64,000 nt of DNA, from positions 62,001-126,000 of IMG/VR virus record IMGVR_UViG_3300037042_002125, one strand, 5' to 3'. Both the position numbers and the translations under genes were made by a program. Below are positions 3,344-16,645 of the stretch, one piece after another. Positions within the stretch are counted from its first letter, which is position 1, and the number at the start of each line of letters is the position of its first letter. The notes under the pieces are model-generated. The model worked only from the letters and a program-made list of their open reading frames with translations, did not search any database and was not told where the DNA came from.

Positions 3344-5196
3344 GTTACTCCGAATAACACCTTGCGGAACGCTGGGCTCTTGCCCAACAGAAGCTGGAAG
3401 TCTTGCGAGCCTTTCTTATCTGGCGGCATAACTTGATACAGCTTGCGAATTTTAGGATCAAGGGCAATGTCGAGATCACTCTCACTCAACTCACCCCAAC
3501 CTTTGATGTAAGTCACCTCACATTTGGTGGTGCCTGTTTTCTCAAACACCTGCTCTTTGGTCATGCCGAAGTATATGACACCTTTGTACCTCGATTTGTA
3601 CAACGGCGCTTTCACCACAAAGACCTTACCATCCTTGAACAGCGATGGTAAATACTTCCACAGCACACCTAAAAGCAGGACATTGATGTGGTCACCGTCA
3701 ACATCAGGGTCGGCCATGTTAATGATCTTGCCGTAGGGCACGTTCAAGTTAGGTCGCTTGCCACCTAAGTCAATGCCAAGTGCAGCCAGCAGACCAACAA
3801 CCTCAGCGTTGCCATTGATCTTTTCCTTTTTGGCCTCCATAACGTTCAGGGGCTTGCCTCGCAGAGGATAAATCGCCTGCGTGTACTTGTTACGTGCCCG
3901 CTTTGCACCACCACCAGCAGAGTCACCCTCAACAAGGAACAGCTCGCGTTGCTCGACTGGCGCGTTACCTTGGATAGGTGCCAACTTGGTGGCCAGCTTT
4001 TTCTTTGCAGCGTTAACGTTCTTGACAAGCTTCTTGTCCTTGAGGAAGTCAGCGGTCTTGCTGCGTAGTAAGGCCGCTCGCGTTACAACGTCACGCGCCA
4101 TTCCTTTGTGTGCTACCCAAAAATCATGGAAGGCTTTCAGGAACTGTTTATACCCCACCTCGTACACACGGTCATCTATCAGCTTGTCCTTCGGTTGGTT
4201 GTTGAACTGCGGTGCAGCTATCTTGTAGTTGACAAGGCCGATCAAGCCATCCTTCAAGTCAGACGGTGTGTACTTGTTCTTACCTTGGTATGGTACAAGG
4301 GACTTAACCATTGCATCAACAAGGGCCTTCACATGCTCACCACCCTCCTTGTTATGCAGGCCGTTAGTGTAGGCGTCGATCAGGTTGTCACCTTCGCAGT
4401 CAGTGAACGCAATAGCAATGTCCGCCTCCTTGCTGGAGAACACAAACGATTTGCCCATCTGAGTAGCCTTGAGCTCATCAATCTTGTTCACAATATACTC
4501 GGCAGGACCCTTCGTAATAAACGTCTTGGTCTTGCCTTTACTATTTGTGATCTTGACCTCCAAGCCTTTAACCAAGTAGGACGTTAGCTCTGCCCAGCTA
4601 AGTGGGTCCTTAGGGTTCAGCTTTGCTCCTTTGTGGAACAAACTTAGGTCCGGAGAGAAGCACACCACAGTGCCCTTCTTTGCCTTAATCCCATGTGGCA
4701 GCTTAGGCGCTTTGCCCTTGTATACCTGCTTGCTAAGTTTGGCATCCCTGTACTCGATGCACCACCACGCACCATCACGGAACGTCCAGACCTTGAAGAA
4801 TTTGGACATTGCATTGGTGGCCTTGATACCAACACCGTGCGTGCCTCGGCTTATAGTGTCGCCACTAAAGTTGGAGCCACCGTGCGTCAAGCCTGTCACC
4901 ACGTAGAACGTTGACATCTTCTCTTTGCGGCCTTGCTCGTCCAGGAACTCCTTCTTGCCAACTGGGATGCCTTCACCACCATCAACAACCCAGTAAACGT
5001 TAGGCTCTGCATCGAAGATCAAATGCACGAGCTTATTACGGCCTGCAAGCGCCTGATCTACCGCGTTGTCCGCTGGCTCTCGGAACATAGTCCACAAGCC
5101 GTTGCCGTCGGTTGGCCCCAAATAAGGGGTGGGCTTTTTTCTAATTCCCATGAGCCCCGCATGTCTCTCAATATGGGATTCGTCGTACTTTGTCAT
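3340..5196 (-). CDS. gyrB: type IIA DNA topoisomerase subunit B (GyrB/ParE-like)
   Basis: GHKL motifs EPADNAVD, THGGSNF, GTHGVG; Toprim motifs LVEGDSA, PLRGK, DPDVDG, KGWGE. Confidence 0.95.
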   Translation of the reverse strand: MTKYDESHIERHAGLMGIRKKPTPYLGPTDGNGLWTMFREPADNAVDQALAGRNKLVHLIFDAEPNVYWVVDGGEGIPVGKKEFLDEQGRKEKMSTFYVVTGLTHGGSNFSGDTISRGTHGVGIKATNAMSKFFKVWTFRDGAWWCIEYRDAKLSKQVYKGKAPKLPHGIKAKKGTVVCFSPDLSLFHKGAKLNPKDPLSWAELTSYLVKGLEVKITNSKGKTKTFITKGPAEYIVNKIDELKATQMGKSFVFSSKEADIAIAFTDCEGDNLIDAYTNGLHNKEGGEHVKALVDAMVKSLVPYQGKNKYTPSDLKDGLIGLVNYKIAAPQFNNQPKDKLIDDRVYEVGYKQFLKAFHDFWVAHKGMARDVVTRAALLRSKTADFLKDKKLVKNVNAAKKKLATKLAPIQGNAPVEQRELFLVEGDSAGGGAKRARNKYTQAIYPLRGKPLNVMEAKKEKINGNAEVVGLLAALGIDLGGKRPNLNVPYGKIINMADPDVDGDHINVLLLGVLWKYLPSLFKDGKVFVVKAPLYKSRYKGVIYFGMTKEQVFEKTGTTKCEVTYIKGWGELSESDLDIALDPKIRKLYQVMPPDKKGSQDFQLLLGKSPAFRKVLFGVT

Positions 5197-11764: not shown

Positions 11765-11842
11765 TGGTGGGACGTGTAGGACTTGAACCTACGACCAATG
11801 GATTATGAGTCCACTGCTACTGACCAACTGAGCTAACGTCCC
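11765..11842 (-). tRNA. tRNA with CAT anticodon, probably tRNA-Ile2 (lysidine type) rather than Met
   Basis: GGGACGT/ACGTCCC acceptor, GTGGA-CTCATAA-TCCAT anticodon arm, GGTTCAAGTCC T-arm, encoded CCA. Confidence 0.93.
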
Positions 11843-12321: not shown

Positions 12322-12720
<399 letters not shown>

Positions 12721-12756
12721 CACCACAACCATATGAAGGTCAAGTTAGACTTACCC

Positions 12757-12826
12757 TTCTCAAAGTACGCTAGGAGAGAATGTACCAAATCAAGTATGCA
12801 AGATTTGGCCTAACGTGCTTTGAGAA
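12757..12826 (-). ncRNA. structured ncRNA D (unknown)
   Basis: terminal stem TTCTCAAAGCACGTTAGG/CCTAGCGTACTTTGAGAA plus inner CCAAATC/GATTTGG hairpin. Confidence 0.55.
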
Positions 12827-12829
12827 AGA

Positions 12830-12994
12830 TAGTGCCACAGTTGGAAAACATTCCTAGCCCCGATCATCTGTCTTGCGACAGACGCCTTACTATCAAAAGC
12901 CTAAATTTCTCACGTCTAGACAATGATCTCTCTTAATGTAGGCTCACCGACCTGAGACAGGCCGACTCTCAAACGCTCTCCAACTGTGGCACTA
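12830..12994 (-). ncRNA. structured ncRNA C (unknown)
   Basis: perfect 16-bp closing stem TAGTGCCACAGTTGGA/TCCAACTGTGGCACTA; TCTGTC-GCAA-GACAGA GNRA hairpin. Confidence 0.65.
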
Positions 12995-13004
12995 GCACTA
13001 ACCC

Positions 13005-13158
13005 TTCTTTGACCGCACTAACCTTCGGCACATTTATTCAATCGCCTTTCGGCGCAACGTGCAGCAACAAGACTAGCATTTCAGTTAGACGCCGCGGCGT
13101 TTATATACCTACCAACTTCTAGATTAAATAGGCATACCCAAATAGTGCGTTCAAAGAA
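13005..13158 (-). ncRNA. structured ncRNA B (unknown)
   Basis: closing stem TTCTTTGAACGCACTA/TAGTGCGGTCAAAGAA (15/16); CGCC-GAAA-GGCG GNRA hairpin. Confidence 0.62.
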
Positions 13159-13185
13159 AGGTCCTACTACCCATGATATAATTTA

Positions 13186-13371
13186 GGGTGCTGGCCGGCT
13201 AAGTAGGACCTCAATCCAGTTTTCGTGTCTTCAGATTTGTGGGGGCCTAACCCTCTCCGAATAACGATGCAGCCACTTAAGGCTAGTATGACCACCCACA
13301 CATTTTTCACTGGAAGCCCTATGTAGGTTTTTACTGACTGCAGGCGACGAACTTAACCTTCACCAGTATTT
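13186..13371 (-). ncRNA. structured ncRNA A (unknown)
   Basis: closing stem ATACTGG/CCAGCAC; nested TCCAGT/ACTGGA and TGTGGG/CCCACA stems; no ORF. Confidence 0.5.
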
Positions 13372-13375
13372 CTAT

Positions 13376-13624
13376 TTACAATTTGAGCTCATTGCAGATT
13401 GCACTGACAAGGTCTGTCCATGTTTCAATTTTGGCACAAACTTTATCGCTCAGTTCAATGTTGAATCTCTCTTCGAACTCCATAACAAGCACAATCAAAT
13501 CCAGAGAGTCTGCACCACTCTCTGAGATATTCTTATCAATCCGAATTTGATCTTTAGCCACACCTAAGTGTTCTGCTATGGTAGTATGGACACCCATTAC
13601 AATGTCCGACTTGGTAAGTATCAT
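13376..13624 (-). CDS. acpP: acyl carrier protein
   Basis: 82 aa with GADSLD phosphopantetheine site and MEFEERFNIEL helix. Confidence 0.9.
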   Translation of the reverse strand: MILTKSDIVMGVHTTIAEHLGVAKDQIRIDKNISESGADSLDLIVLVMEFEERFNIELSDKVCAKIETWTDLVSAICNELKL

Positions 13625-13807
13625 CTACTTCTCCATATCTACACACATCAACAGTGATGTAAACAAACGTTCTACTTTTTTACGATCACGTTTCCACAGC
13701 TTACGGGCCTTTCCTGGTGGCGGTGCACAGCAATTACACTTCCACCCACCTGGGCCAATAGACTTGTGGTTCATAACCTTCCGGTAGAACGCCTTTTCAG
13801 TTTGCAT
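13625..13807 (-). CDS. small basic Cys-containing phage protein
   Basis: IGPGGWKCNCC motif; AGGAG RBS. Confidence 0.65.
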   Translation of the reverse strand: MQTEKAFYRKVMNHKSIGPGGWKCNCCAPPPGKARKLWKRDRKKVERLFTSLLMCVDMEK

Positions 13808-13986
13808 GAAATCTCCTTGAAGTTAATCATCGCTTCATGGGATTCTCCTTAAGTTGGATTGGATTGAAATGCAGGAACACTAAAAATAGTGTTTACATAA
13901 AGAAAAATGCAGTTTACGCTACTGCAAAACGTAGTCAAAAGTTGACGTTAAACGTCAACAAAGTAGGAGAACTATAACTTTTACTA

Positions 13987-14568
13987 TTAGGCCTTTGGCA
14001 AGGTCACACCGACCTGACCTTGGTACTTACCACCGCGGCTGGCGTAAGTCGTTTCGCACTGCTCGTCGCTTTGGAAGAACAACATTTGGGCGCAGCCTTC
14101 GTTGGCGTAAATCTTTGCTGGCAGCGGCGTTGTGTTCGAGAACTCAAGCGTAACGTATCCTTCCCACTCTGGCTCAAGAGGAGTGACGTTGACAACAATG
14201 CCGCACCTGGCGTAAGTGCTCTTGCCCAAACAAATAACAAGTACGTCACTAGGGATAATGAAATACTCCAAGGTACGGGCCAGCGCAAAGCTGTTAGGTG
14301 GGATGATACAATATCCCTTGCCGCTAACGTCAACAAAGCAACCTTCGTCAAAATCCTTTGGATCAACAATGGTGCTGTTGATGTTGGTGAAGACCTTAAA
14401 CTCGTCTGCACACCGTACGTCGTAGCCATAAGATGATGTCCCATAGCTAATAACCTTTTTGCCTTTGTTGGCGGATCGCACTTGCCCTGGCTCAAAAGGT
14501 GCAATCATAGGTCTGAATTTTAAGCCTAGGCACTGCTCTCGAATCCATTTGTCGCTTTTGATACTCAT
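13987..14568 (-). CDS. dcd: dCTP deaminase
   Basis: [32 protein letters not shown] motifs; proteobacterial type. Confidence 0.97.
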
Positions 14569-14850: not shown

Positions 14851-15123
14851 TCAGCCGCCTATGTAAAAGTCAGAAGGTTTCCGATCAGGTTGGAACAACG
14901 TCTCTGCCGCAAGGGCGACGTTGCATTGCATGTCCGAGAACGATGCGTCAGCGTTCTGCGTACCGCGCAGGAACCCAACGACCTTGTGCATTGTGTCATG
15001 CAGGTACGCCTCAAAGCTCACGCCGCTGGTTGGCTGGTTGGTGTCTGCAAAGTATTTATGGACGGCGCCTGTGACGAACCAGAGCAAATGCGTGTGATCG
15101 TATTGGGGACTAGGTTGTTTCAT
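14851..15123 (-). CDS. hypothetical protein
   Basis: ATG 15123 with AGGA RBS. Confidence 0.6.
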   Translation of the reverse strand: MKQPSPQYDHTHLLWFVTGAVHKYFADTNQPTSGVSFEAYLHDTMHKVVGFLRGTQNADASFSDMQCNVALAAETLFQPDRKPSDFYIGG

Positions 15124-15150
15124 AAAAAGTTCCTGGTTAAAGTTCAGTAA

Positions 15151-15762
15151 GAGAAAACAAAAGAGAGAACATAGACGCTTTTCGTACCACTTCATCTTTC
15201 GAAGCCCACCTTAGTGGTTCGTGGTCTGGACTATGCCTTAACCAATCATGCCGCACAGCTAATGCGGTTAGGCTTTTCTGATAAAGAAATCCCTACATGA
15301 CTTGAGGTCCGCGCCGTCTAGTCTCTACACCTTCCCAAAATTTTAGCTTTGGGCTTGGCTCGGCGTTATCATATATCAGTACGTCACATTCTCTGCTCCA
15401 TAAGGAGACTGGCTAGTTACGGTTTTTGATGTGGCCGCCCAGCGGATGCCAACAACCGGTGACTGTGGAAACTGTTATTACCACCTGACTTAGAGTTCGC
15501 CGAATTTGACGCGATTCACCTTCCCCCTAATTTACCTACCTACTATTTTTCAAGTAGCTGCAGGTTTTTCGAAGGGACATTTTATACGCCTTTCGGTTGC
15601 GTTCTTCAATCCTAGGAAATCAACGGCTGGTGAGTTACACACCAGCGGTTAGGCCCTGTCGTGACTTCTGCGGATTTAACCCAAACGCATTTTTCGTAGA
15701 TGCACAATTATCTCCTTGAGGAGTCTATCAATGTACGCCTATGTTCTCACTTTTGTTTTCTC
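15151..15762. repeat. 27-nt inverted repeat arms (15151-15177 and 15736-15762)
   Basis: GAGAAAACAAAAGTGAGAACATAGGCG vs CGTCTATGTTCTCTCTTTTGTTTTCTC: 25 WC pairs, 1 G:U, 1 mismatch. Confidence 0.9.
15183..15585 (-). ncRNA. group I intron ribozyme core, IC3 Azoarcus/tRNA type; no host gene seen; 5' boundary uncertain (15585 or 15734)
   Basis: CGCGTC-AAATTCGGCGAA (P3/P4), AACGCCGAGCCAAGC (P4/P6), GAAGGTGTAGAGACTAGACGGCGCG (P7/P3), AAGGCATAGTCC (P7), P9 ACCAC/GTGGT, candidate terminal G at 15183. Confidence 0.9.
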
Positions 15763-15788
15763 ACTATCTATTTACAGTTTGAGCAAAA

Positions 15789-16172
15789 CTAGCTCTTTGG
15801 CTCAAGCCCTTCTATGTTAAGGACCTGACCTCGTAATAATCTAGCTCTCATTTCAAAATCCTCGCACTCACGTTGCTCTGTGTTCGTGCGATGTTGCAGT
15901 TTGCGAATACGTGCCGCGATCTGCTCAAAATCTTCAGCAGTGCCAGTCAATACCTTTACCGCCGCGTCTAAGCCTGCTTGGTATTGATCCTTGCGATTAT
16001 CAGAAAGTATCTTGATAATAGCTTTGATAAAGGAGCGCAAGCCTTTAGGGCTGAACCCATGAGTGGTGTACCCGCTAGCATCAACTTTGCCATAGCCAAA
16101 GTCCTCATGCTTAACTGCCAAGGCCTCAATTTGCTTAACAGTGATTATGCGAATCGGATAAATGGTTTTCAC
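15789..16172 (-). CDS. hypothetical protein
   Basis: 127-aa ORF with GGAG RBS. Confidence 0.65.
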   Translation of the reverse strand: MKTIYPIRIITVKQIEALAVKHEDFGYGKVDASGYTTHGFSPKGLRSFIKAIIKILSDNRKDQYQAGLDAAVKVLTGTAEDFEQIAARIRKLQHRTNTEQRECEDFEMRARLLRGQVLNIEGLEPKS

Positions 16173-16390: not shown

Positions 16391-16645
16391 TTAGCAGCTA
16401 ATTATAGAAATGGGCCTTCTCGACTCTCGCCGCATCCTACGCAAGATCGCCGCATCCTTGTCAAGGCTCGTCAAGGTCTTACGCATCTTGTCCAAAGCCT
16501 CTTCATACTCTTTTTTAGCATGATCCACCGAAGGTCCGGAACCTTGGTCCTCAAACCACCCCCAGTGCTTTGTTGCACTAACAAATTCTGCCAATAGAGT
16601 TTCAAGCCTCTTAGGCAGGACTTGGGTCTTTGATTTTGTGTTCAT
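16391..16645 (-). CDS. hypothetical protein
   Basis: 84-aa ORF with GGAG RBS. Confidence 0.6.
   Translation of the reverse strand: MNTKSKTQVLPKRLETLLAEFVSATKHWGWFEDQGSGPSVDHAKKEYEEALDKMRKTLTSLDKDAAILRRMRRESRRPISIISC

What the first reader, a model, noticed from the sequence alone, without database searches (positions are those of the whole stretch)
15151..15777. Orphan group I ribozyme apparently transcribed as its own unit and clamped by 27-nt complementary arms
Seen: a complete IC3-type core on the minus strand, with core words matching the Azoarcus tRNA-Ile intron as I recall it and a covarying P3 (CGCGUC/GACGGCGCG). It is not inside a tRNA, rRNA or CDS and has no endonuclease ORF. A CTGTAAAT promoter-like motif (15770) precedes arm A (15762-15736), and arm B (15177-15151) follows 5 nt after the candidate omega-G (15183). 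Splicing at AGGCGU|A (15735) would leave only a 27-bp hairpin with a UAAAAG loop. Known: IC3 introns normally interrupt tRNA anticodon loops, where the tRNA stem brings the splice sites together. Inference: the arms replace the tRNA scaffold, so the ribozyme or its released RNA is the functional product (a domesticated ribozyme). It also has large P2, P5 and P8 insertions. This is the best candidate for an undescribed system here.
Basis: partly seen in the sequence, partly recalled or inferred. Interest (0 to 1): 0.92.

Follow-up and report, generated by a model that had tools for sequence, protein, structure and literature searches.

The report
Group I intron in hairpin leader
A jumbo-phage self-splicing-type RNA (group I intron) that normally lives inside tRNA genes sits here in the tip of a long hairpin at the start of a messenger RNA, so it interrupts no gene; this host site for such introns is unusual and I found no description of it.

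Summary
Window 15183-15730 (minus strand) is an intact IC3-type group I ribozyme: Rfam RF00028 43.8 bits (below gathering 50), E 1.3e-9; 70 bits, E about 1e-16, against my model of tRNA-hosted relatives, ending exactly at G15183. It is flanked by 27-nt complementary arms, the longest inverted repeat in the window.

It lies in no tRNA or CDS and has no endonuclease ORF. It follows a promoter-like word (ACTGTAAAT, 11 copies against 0.67 expected).

Relatives change the reading:
- Its closest kin are phage tRNA anticodon-loop introns. One, in a tRNA(CAU) gene (L154), shares the 21-nt guide/P2 word.
- A distant homologue in another jumbo phage (L144) has the same layout: promoter word, 8 nt, exon stem, CAU|A loop, exon stem. 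Its 8-10 bp arms have a different sequence, and an HNH endonuclease gene follows.

The arms therefore stand in for the anticodon stem.

No terminator follows, so the element is the leader of an operon, not its own unit. I read it as a relocated, probably still splicing intron. Domestication is neither shown nor excluded. I class it as a new variant of a known kind.

The parts
15770..15778 (-). Promoter-like word ACTGTAAAT, 7 nt upstream of arm A.
   Evidence: 11 copies in the window against 0.67 expected. Strand follows gene orientation; most copies lie shortly upstream of an apparent ribosome-binding site and start codon. Invariant in all 6 related loci. L144 has the same word, 8 nt before its arm, and again before another gene.
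15736..15762 (-). Arm A: 5' exon strand of the exon-exon stem. It lies at or near the predicted 5' end of the transcript.
   Evidence: 92.6% identical between the two haplotypes.
15731..15735 (-). Last 5 nt of the 5' exon (UACAU). CAU pairs with the guide sequence. Proposed 5' splice site is U15731|U15730.
   Evidence: CAU|UGA and the guide word AUUGUG are conserved in the window, L011 and L144. L154 shares the same guide/P2 word and gives a tRNA(CAU) when its exons are joined after CAU.
15183..15730 (-). The intron: 548 nt, IC3-type group I ribozyme.
15703..15730 (-). Intron side of the P1 hairpin. The distal stem CUCC/GGAG is capped by UCAA. The internal guide GUG is at 15705-15703.
   Evidence: The distal stem changes sequence but stays paired: UCCC-GCAA-GGGA in L011 and GUCGUG-GUGA-CACGAC in L144.
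15577..15701 (-). P2 domain. Closing helix is AUCUACG/CGUAUAA. Inner helix P2a is UGCGUUU (15689-83) paired with GAACGCA (15604-598). Includes the hairpin at 15646-15626.
   Evidence: Homologous to the P2 domain of tRNA-hosted L142, L143 and L154, with compensatory changes.
15519..15576 (-). P2.1 hairpin (CCCUUC ... GGGGGAAGG), between P2 and J2/3.
   Evidence: Predicted. Invariant between the haplotypes, so it has no covariation test. L144, L150, L151 and L154 carry an insert of different sequence at this place.
15330..15513 (-). P3 5' strand (15513-08), J3/4, P4 (15504-498 paired with 15366-59), P5 with a roughly 120-nt extension (15486-15367), and P6 (15358-30).
   Evidence: Core words are identical to those of tRNA-hosted relatives.
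15183..15329 (-). J6/7, P7 (GACUA paired with UAGUC), P3 3' strand (15315-10), P8 with a roughly 45-nt extension (15309-15240), J8/7, P9 (CCAC/GUGG with two inner hairpins), and omega-G at 15183.
   Evidence: The model R1 alignment ends at 15183. Coordinates.
15178..15182 (-). First 5 nt of the 3' exon (AAAAG). Together with the 5' exon's last nucleotides they form the loop of the ligated hairpin.
15151..15177 (-). Arm B: 3' exon strand of the stem, U-rich.
14851..15136 (-). Ribosome-binding site (AGGA) and a 90-aa ORF of unknown function starting at ATG 15123. It is the first gene of the downstream same-strand run of genes, which includes a small membrane-like ORF, dCTP deaminase and an acyl-carrier-type protein.
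   Evidence: No terminator-like site lies between arm B and these genes.

Best explanation
This is a group I (IC3) intron of the kind that lives in phage tRNA anticodon loops, but its 'exons' are only the two strands of a long hairpin at the 5' end of an mRNA.

Proposed course of events:
- Transcription starts a few nucleotides after the ACTGTAAAT word, so arm A is the start of the RNA.
- The 548-nt ribozyme folds. The last exon nucleotides, CAU, pair with the internal guide GUG (P1, with a U.G wobble at U15731).
- Arm B, made last, zips up with arm A. This holds the short 5' exon and the 3' splice site together, as the anticodon stem does in pre-tRNA.
- Guanosine attacks after U15731. The freed 5' exon then attacks after omega-G15183.
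- The products are the excised intron and an mRNA. The mRNA's leader is a stem of about 27 bp with an 8-10 nt loop (..ACAU|AAAA..), followed by the ribosome-binding site of the 90-aa ORF and the genes downstream.

Shown: the ribozyme core, the arms, the promoter-like word, homology to tRNA-hosted introns, conservation of the layout in a second phage, and purifying selection.

Inferred: the transcription start, the actual splicing, the exact 5' splice site, and that the leftover hairpin merely caps or stabilises the leader.

Origin (inferred): relocation from, or decay of, a tRNA(CAU)-type host. Spread was possibly helped by a neighbouring HNH endonuclease gene, which the L144 copy still has and this copy lacks.
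For: Ribozyme core:
- It matches group I models, and the match ends at the predicted omega-G.

Host sites of related introns:
- Of 92 elements with this core and definable ends, 77 rebuild a tRNA on joining the flanks. Four more sit in what looks, by eye, like a capsid-type protein gene.
- Only the window's lineage has an exon stem longer than 14 pairs.

5' splice site:
- L154 has the identical 21-nt word ATTGTGCATCTACGAAAAATG. Joining its exons after CAU gives tRNA(CAU). This fixes the guide sequence and splice site by homology.

The homologue L144, from a 282-kb contig whose dCTP deaminase is about 70-85% identical across tblastx segments:
- It keeps the order promoter word, 8 nt, exon stem, CAU|A, exon stem.
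- Both the exon stem and the distal P1 stem have different sequences, and the P1 hairpin is capped by GUGA, a GNRA-type loop.
- P2 and P2a covary across the orphan and tRNA-hosted copies.

Selection:
- Between the two haplotypes the intron (measured as 15183-15735) is 95.7% identical; the 15183-15519 part is 97.3%.
- Third codon positions of four of the five neighbouring genes checked are 44-87% identical; one small ORF (16391-16645) shows no third-position excess.
- The differences that fall in predicted helices keep pairing.

Context:
- No tRNA or CDS is restored on joining. The join U15731+AA makes UAA in the frame of the downstream ORF (read).
- The ligated leader folds to -41 kcal/mol.
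- At least two other leaders after the same word start with a hairpin.
- An HNH_3 gene starts 28 nt after the L144 intron.
Against: - No transcript data exist: neither the start site nor a spliced junction has been seen.
- P1 has only 3 exon-side pairs. In the orphan copies its intron side begins with UxU, G.U, AxA, weaker than in L154.
- Rfam's own threshold is not reached.
- A 27-bp stem is far more than splicing should need: 5 bp in tRNAs and 8-10 bp in L144. This is unexplained.
- Such a stem would probably be an RNase III substrate, and its upper 13 bp followed by a U-rich run resembles an intrinsic terminator.
- The arms of the two haplotypes differ at only 3 positions with no double compensatory change. 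Support for the arms from covariation therefore rests on the single distant homologue L144.
- The whole ribozyme, including its peripheral domains, is highly conserved in a copy with no endonuclease. This is also what a co-opted function would predict.
Confidence: 0.6

Rival explanations
1. Domesticated ribozyme. The structured RNA, or a reaction it performs, is the selected product. The arms would be a processing or insulating stem that releases or frames it, rather than exons to be ligated.
For: - The whole 548 nt, including the peripheral P2.1, P5 and P8 extensions, is under purifying selection, yet there is no endonuclease and no host gene to protect.
- The same phage carries other conserved structured RNAs closed by 20-23 bp stems just upstream of its tmRNA. 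One unit, at 13162-13001, differs from L011 at only 3 positions within the unit (arms). Long closing stems around RNA modules may therefore be a habit of this genome.
- Other intergenic IC3 copies exist. L023 has a perfect TTGACA-17-TATAAT promoter; L017, L021 and L150 are further cases.
Against: - Every feature needed for ordinary splicing is kept: the U.G at the CAU guide pairing, omega-G, and exon pairing next to both splice sites.
- The nearest relatives are plain tRNA introns.
- The L144 copy has an HNH homing-endonuclease-type gene next to it, which marks a selfish mobile intron.
- Conservation is equally expected if failure to splice harms the operon behind it.
Confidence: 0.15
2. Regulatory leader. 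The exon hairpin is an attenuator or terminator, or an RNase III site. The ribozyme in its loop would set whether and when the hairpin forms, coupling expression of the downstream genes (which include dCTP deaminase) to ribozyme folding, splicing or guanosine nucleotides.
For: - Read, the upper 13 bp of the stem (6 G-C pairs) are followed by UCUUUUGUUUUCUCUU and preceded by an A-rich run. This is the anatomy of an intrinsic terminator with an A-tract.
- The stem sits between a promoter-like word and the first ribosome-binding site.
- A group I ribozyme in a 5' UTR that controls translation is known from Clostridioides difficile (PMC3984707).
Against: - The ribosome-binding site is not sequestered by the arms.
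- No aptamer-like family is detected next to the ribozyme at E up to 10.
- The arms can pair whether or not the intron has spliced, so splicing changes little.
- L144's arms are only 8-10 bp, and by eye no comparable U-run follows them, so the terminator-like look is not conserved.
Confidence: 0.12
3. Decaying remnant. A tRNA gene and its intron have both died, and the similarity is residual.
For: - By eye, L151 carries a related intron whose 3' exon still looks like a tRNA-Leu 3' half, yet no tRNA is called on joining its exons. Host decay therefore may happen in this family.
- The Rfam score is below the gathering threshold.
Against: - The intron is much better conserved than the synonymous sites of most neighbouring genes.
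- Differences in predicted helices keep pairing, and the helices covary across distant copies.
- No residual tRNA similarity is found in the flanks: local-alignment z is at most 1.1.
Confidence: 0.05
4. DNA-level mobile element. The arms would be terminal inverted repeats of a small non-autonomous transposon that happens to carry a ribozyme.
For: 27-nt imperfect inverted repeats flank a 558-nt non-coding segment.
Against: - No flanking direct repeat is present; instead the complementarity continues outward (AGU/ACU).
- The arm sequence occurs nowhere else in the window or in IMG/VR.
- The arms abut the RNA splice sites. In L144 they have a different sequence but the same position relative to the splice sites and the promoter word.
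Confidence: 0.03

Closest known systems
IC3 group I introns in tRNA anticodon loops: bacterial and plastid tRNA-Leu(UAA), Azoarcus tRNA-Ile(CAU), and their phage counterparts found here (L002-L007, L142, L143, L154).
   Same: - Same catalytic core words and helices.
- Same short P1. Here CAU/GUG, which from my own recollection is the Azoarcus pairing.
- No evident P10.
- Splice sites bracketed by an exon-exon helix.
- Identical guide/P2 word to the tRNA(CAU) copy L154.
   Different: - There is no tRNA. The exon helix is 27 bp instead of 5.
- The helix lies in an mRNA leader directly after a promoter-like word.
- The ligated product is a hairpin, not a functional RNA gene.
c-di-GMP-responsive group I ribozyme in a 5' UTR of Clostridioides difficile (as summarised in PMC3984707).
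   Same: A bacterial-type group I ribozyme in the untranslated leader of an mRNA rather than inside a gene.
   Different: - No aptamer was detected here.
- No alternative splice site that builds a ribosome-binding site is evident.
- It belongs to a different subgroup and context.
Introns paired with a free-standing homing endonuclease gene next to them ('collaborative homing' in phages).
   Same: In L144 an HNH_3 gene starts 28 nt after the intron, in the same orientation.
   Different: The window copy has no endonuclease gene nearby, and the target would be a non-coding hairpin rather than a conserved gene.
Processing stems around stable RNAs (for example the RNase III stems flanking rRNA), and engineered complementary 'homology arms' used to bring group I splice sites together in circular-RNA constructs. 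Both are from my own knowledge.
   Same: Long complementary flanks bring the two ends of a large structured RNA together.
   Different: Cleavage of these arms has not been tested. The order of intron halves is natural, not permuted, so the ligated product is linear.

Membership tests
Group I intron (Rfam RF00028) | Score at or above Rfam's gathering threshold. | tested here: not met
   43.8 bits against 50, with E 1.3e-9. The verified tRNA-hosted relatives also score 40-49 bits, so the threshold is too strict for this subfamily.
Group I intron (Rfam RF00028) | Conserved core helices P3-P9 with the P7 guanosine-site words. | tested here: met
   The family-specific model gives 70 bits, E 1e-14 to 1e-16. 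P3, P4, P6, P7, P8 and P9 are located, and they covary in the family.
Group I intron (Rfam RF00028) | [quoted passage not shown] | tested here: met
   U15731.G15705 lies in the CAU/GUG pairing, conserved in L011, L144 and L154. The model ends at G15183. These are predictions, not mapped ends.
Group I intron (Rfam RF00028) | Guanosine-dependent self-splicing. | not testable with these tools
   Needs in vitro transcription or RNA-seq.
tRNA anticodon-loop IC3 introns | Interrupts a tRNA anticodon loop, so that excision restores a tRNA. | tested here: not met
   No tRNA is called at any U-ending join or at the CAU join. The flanks show no tRNA similarity.
tRNA anticodon-loop IC3 introns | An exon-exon helix immediately flanks both splice sites. 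| tested here: met
   27-28 pairs here, and 8-10 in L144 with a different sequence. The tRNA-hosted copies have a 5-bp anticodon stem.
Allosteric (c-di-GMP) group I ribozyme | A ligand-binding aptamer adjacent to the ribozyme. | tested here: not met
   No riboswitch family is found at E up to 10 in 14900-16000.
IStron | Group I ribozyme fused to IS200/IS605-type transposase genes. | tested here: not met
   The only ORFs of 40 aa or more within the intron span are two plus-strand ORFs of 48 and 40 aa (15506-15652, 15597-15719); nothing of transposase size is present.
Intrinsic terminator | G+C-rich stem immediately followed by a U-run that ends transcripts. | tested here: inconclusive
   The upper stem plus the U-rich arm B looks like one by eye. 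The scanner cannot see it because the intron sits in the loop. Function was not tested.
Inverted-repeat transposon (MITE-like) | Target-site duplication and multiple copies. | tested here: not met
   No flanking direct repeat is present. The arm sequence is unique in the window and in IMG/VR.

The most novel reading that the evidence does not exclude
The intron has been co-opted as a leader device. A ribozyme at the very 5' end of a phage transcript would, by folding and splicing, decide the fate of a 27-bp terminal stem. That stem could act as a cap-like stabiliser, an RNase III site or a terminator. This would tie expression of the downstream genes, or release of a stable ribozyme RNA, to infection stage or guanosine nucleotide supply. 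Together with L144, L150, L023 and similar loci it would define a class of 'gene-less' group I ribozymes in large phages.
Probability: 0.15. Interest if true: 0.8.

Novelty: new variant of a known kind. Interest (0 to 1): 0.55.

Why it matters
Group I introns are thought to persist by hiding in conserved genes (tRNA, rRNA, essential proteins), where precise splicing makes them harmless. Here a well-conserved intron has no gene around it. Its exons have shrunk to, or were chosen as, a hairpin that offers only what the ribozyme needs: three guide-pairing nucleotides in a loop and a stem that holds the splice sites together.

This gives three things:
- A natural minimal exon context for IC3 ribozymes.
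- A plausible route by which tRNA introns escape to non-genic sites in jumbo phages.
- A natural counterpart to the complementary arms that engineers add to group I constructs.

If the ribozyme turned out to control the leader it sits in, it would be only the second kind of regulatory group I ribozyme that I am aware of.

Tried and rejected
Alternative 5' splice sites and guide sequences that I tried:
- (a) GGCGU|A (15735) paired with GCGUUU (15688-83). This conflicts with helix P2a, UGCGUUY/GAACGCA, which covaries.
- (b) The second AGGCGU|AU at 15586, which is Rfam's placement of P1.
- (c) GGAU|U near 15610 paired with GUCC.
- (d) Exon UAKRCGU paired with GCGUAUA (15589-83). This looked strong because the L011 haplotype is 7/7 complementary. 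However, GCGUAUA is the homologue of the P2 3' strand in tRNA-hosted L142 and L143, so I downgraded it to a possible alternative pairing.
- (e) AUGCGU|U at 15685 with the same word.

Other ideas and searches:
- The look-alike of the ancestral tRNA-Leu 5' splice region (CUUNGAAAAAC..) is not significant (z 0.8), and no tRNA remnant is detectable.
- Long-range duplex scoring of the flanks of other orphan copies was uninformative.
- A global alignment to my covariance model fails across the P5 extension, so only the 3' half aligns cleanly.
- Searches through the two flanking proteins found only close relatives, all carrying the intron. No empty site was found.
- The phage nucleotide database gave one partial hit.
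- The genome collection gave nothing for the guide/P2 word.
- Three literature searches found no description of such an element. Absence from that library is weak evidence.

Full report
**What is there**

Read on the minus strand, window 15778 to 15121 holds, in order:
- the word ACTGTAAAT (15778-15770);
- 7 nt;
- arm A (15762-15736);
- UACAU;
- a 548-nt structured segment (15730-15183);
- AAAAG;
- arm B (15177-15151);
- 14 nt;
- a ribosome-binding site and the ATG (15123) of a 90-aa ORF.

The arms are 27 nt and 93% complementary. They are the longest inverted repeat in the 64 kb window. No comparable match to the arm sequence arose in 100 shuffles. The arm sequence occurs nowhere else in IMG/VR.

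The window is identical to part of a 222-kb viral contig, IMGVR_UViG_3300037042_002125. That contig also encodes a permuted tmRNA and a tRNA-Met.

**Is it a group I ribozyme?**

Rfam's default scan does not report it. With E-value reporting, RF00028 matches 15198-15595 at 43.8 bits, E 1.3e-9. This is just under the gathering score of 50.

That shortfall is typical of the subfamily. Bona fide tRNA-hosted relatives score 40-49 bits. A model I built from 16 non-redundant tRNA-hosted cores scores the window at 70 bits, E 1e-14 to 1e-16.

P3 (CGCGUC/GGCGCG), P4, P6, P7 (GACUA/UAGUC), P8 and P9 (CCAC/GUGG) are all present. The same columns covary across relatives.

**What its relatives are**

An exact 20-mer from the P7/P9 region finds phage contigs in which the same core interrupts tRNA genes. 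The only hit in the phage nucleotide database is an unannotated tRNA-Leu(UAA) intron with an HNH ORF in a 595-kb phage.

I made a wider census with a 17-mer of the core, adding loci from the metagenome scan. It gave 92 elements with definable ends:
- 77 rebuild a tRNA when the flanks are joined;
- 4 sit in what looks, by eye, like a capsid-type protein gene;
- the rest are the window's own lineage and a few other intergenic copies: L016/L017, L023 and two truncated loci. L021 also looks intergenic, but its 3' end could not be defined, so it is outside the 92.

Only the window's lineage has an exon-exon helix longer than 14 pairs. The background is 9-14 pairs.

**Close relatives and selection**

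The upstream ORF has three homologue clusters at 88-98% identity. Their contigs (L011=L018, L012, L013, L014, L015) all carry the element at the same place.

Conservation between the two haplotypes:

| Region | Identity |
|---|---|
| Intron, measured as 15183-15735 | 95.7% |
| 15183-15519 part | 97.3% |
| Third codon positions, four of five neighbouring genes | 44-87% |
| Third codon positions, small ORF 16391-16645 | no third-position excess |

The differences that fall in predicted helices preserve pairing. CUCC-UCAA-GGAG becomes UCCC-GCAA-GGGA, and three other helices change only between Watson-Crick and wobble pairs. The RNA is therefore under purifying selection for structure.

The arms differ at three positions with no double compensation. 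These close relatives cannot test the arms.

**Distant homologues settle the anatomy**

A two-anchor pattern requiring a P5 extension of similar size, and then a pattern from the P2 3' strand, found five informative loci:
- L142 and L143, in tRNA-Leu(UAA);
- L154, in tRNA(CAU);
- L144, from a 282-kb contig;
- L150, from a 249-kb contig.

All share the window's 5' domain. This shows three things.

First, that domain is a P2 elaboration common to the subfamily. Its closing helix is AUCUACG/CGUAGAU in L142, ACUAGCG/CGUUAGU in L143, and AUCUACG/CGUAUAA here. The inner helix UGCGUUU/GAACGCA covaries, with UGAGUUG/CAACUCA in L143 and UGCGUUG/CGACGCA in L144.

Second, the internal guide lies directly 5' of P2. 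L154 has the same 21-nt word ATTGTGCATCTACGAAAAATG as the window. Joining its exons after CAU yields a tRNA(CAU). By homology the window's guide is GUG (15705-15703), and the 5' splice site is CAU|U (U15731|U15730).

Third, L144 confirms this:
- CAU|UGA and AUUGUG are conserved.
- The distal P1 stem is entirely different but paired (GUCGUG-GUGA-CACGAC).
- The exons form a stem, UCGAAUCG(AAU)/(AUA)CGAUUCGA, of 8-10 pairs. Its sequence is unrelated to the window's arms.
- That stem starts 8 nt after an ACTGTAAAG word.

The layout of promoter word, exon stem, CAU|A and exon stem is therefore conserved across two jumbo phages. Their dCTP deaminases are about 70-85% identical across tblastx segments, but the neighbouring genes differ.

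**Transcription context**

ACTGTAAAT occurs 11 times against 0.67 expected. Its strand follows gene orientation. Most copies lie about 26-60 nt before an apparent ribosome-binding site and start codon, as read from the printed sequences. It is invariant in all related loci even where the sequence just upstream diverges. It recurs before another gene in L144. I read it as a phage promoter.

No terminator-like site lies between arm B and the following same-strand genes. Those genes are a 90-aa ORF, a small hydrophobic ORF, dCTP deaminase and an acyl-carrier-type protein.

The element is thus the leader of an operon, not a separate unit. After splicing, the leader would fold into a hairpin of -41 kcal/mol at the RNA's 5' end. 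At least two other leaders behind the same word begin with shorter hairpins.

**Mechanism proposed**

The arms play the role of the anticodon stem. They hold a short 5' exon of about 30 nt and the 3' splice site at a ribozyme that has a 3-bp P1 and no P10.

Exon pairing in the anticodon stem was reported to be required for the Anabaena tRNA intron. I know this from the title of Zaug, McEvoy and Cech 1993, listed in PMC3984707. I did not read that paper.

The L144 copy is followed after 27 nt by an HNH_3 endonuclease gene. This points to a mobile-intron history. The window copy has none.

**What remains open**

- Nothing shows that the RNA splices in vivo.
- Twenty-seven pairs is far more than the ribozyme should need. 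It would probably invite RNase III.
- The upper stem followed by U-rich arm B resembles a terminator.
- The same genome holds other conserved structured RNAs closed by 20-23 bp stems. This keeps a processing or regulatory reading alive.

I therefore give the plain 'relocated intron' reading 0.6 and the co-opted readings together about 0.25-0.3.

**Comparison with what is known**

It works like, and descends from, tRNA anticodon-loop IC3 introns. It fails their defining feature, a tRNA host.

It shares a 5'-UTR location with the c-di-GMP ribozyme of C. difficile (PMC3984707), but no aptamer is found.

I found no description of a group I intron whose exons are only a leader hairpin. I class it as a new variant of a known kind.

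Noticed in passing
window 12330-12751 (-): A phage-encoded two-piece (permuted) tmRNA of the betaproteobacterial type with tag peptide ANDENFRMVA. RF04321 scores 85 bits; RF01850 scores 70.6, below its threshold. A tRNA-Met lies at 11765-11842. This may hint at a betaproteobacterial host.
   Followed up: partly
window 12752-13162 (-), behind a promoter-like variant ATTGTAAATAGA near 13368-13379: Three tandem RNA-like units, each closed by a 20-23 bp stem (13162-13001, 12994-12830, 12831-12752), lie just upstream of the tmRNA. None matches Rfam. The first unit differs from L011 at only 3 positions within the unit, far fewer than at neutral sites. The other two fall in a gap of the L011-window BLAST alignment, so they are absent or strongly diverged there.
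   Followed up: partly
window, 11 sites (e.g. 7718, 8837, 26848, 28010, 42878, 44711): ACTGTAAAT is a strongly over-represented, strand-consistent word that mostly lies shortly upstream of gene starts. It is probably this phage family's promoter for one temporal class. Its orientation switches at about 35 kb together with gene direction.
   Followed up: partly
window 14851-15195 (-): Gene callers extend the 90-aa ORF to 114 aa by starting at an ATG inside the intron's P9 and reading through arm B. The database protein P0004 has this form. This is probably an annotation artefact.
   Followed up: partly
L023 (Ga0265293_10003185), about 4080-4660 (+): Another intergenic IC3 ribozyme with a perfect TTGACA-17-TATAAT promoter about 330 nt upstream of its P3. 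It shares part of the P2 domain. It has no long exon stem, and its flanks instead share a direct repeat of about 17 nt.
   Followed up: partly
L150 (IMGVR_UViG_3300037312_000330, 249 kb), about 13650-14400 (+): A third jumbo-phage copy lies behind AACTGTAAATAG, with the same P3 (CGCGUC) and P2 3' word but a different guide region (GGGG). I could not define its splice sites or exon pairing.
   Followed up: partly
L151 (IMGVR_UViG_3300028536_000014, 245 kb), reverse strand of the locus; pattern match at plus-strand 2208-2224: A related 644-nt intron whose 3' exon looks, by eye, like the 3' half of a tRNA-Leu. No tRNA is called after joining its exons. It may be a decayed host, an intermediate between tRNA-hosted and gene-less copies.
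   Followed up: partly
L050, L096, L105, L127: The same IC3 core interrupts a protein-coding gene at a conserved ..DFNTV|KALVQGE.. site. By eye the gene looks like a major-capsid-type gene. This is an unusual host for this intron subgroup.
   Followed up: no
L001 = LR756511.1 409000-410000: An unannotated 595-kb phage record holds a tRNA-Leu(UAA)-like gene split by an IC3 intron that carries an HNH-type ORF. ARAGORN and Rfam (E up to 1) both miss it.
   Followed up: partly
window 15738-15739 against L011/L012/L013: The two changes at the top of arm A (GG to UA) weaken the arm stem. They also make the exon end perfectly complementary (7/7) to GCGUAUA, the P2 3' strand. This may be chance or an alternative pairing; it is unexplained.
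   Followed up: partly
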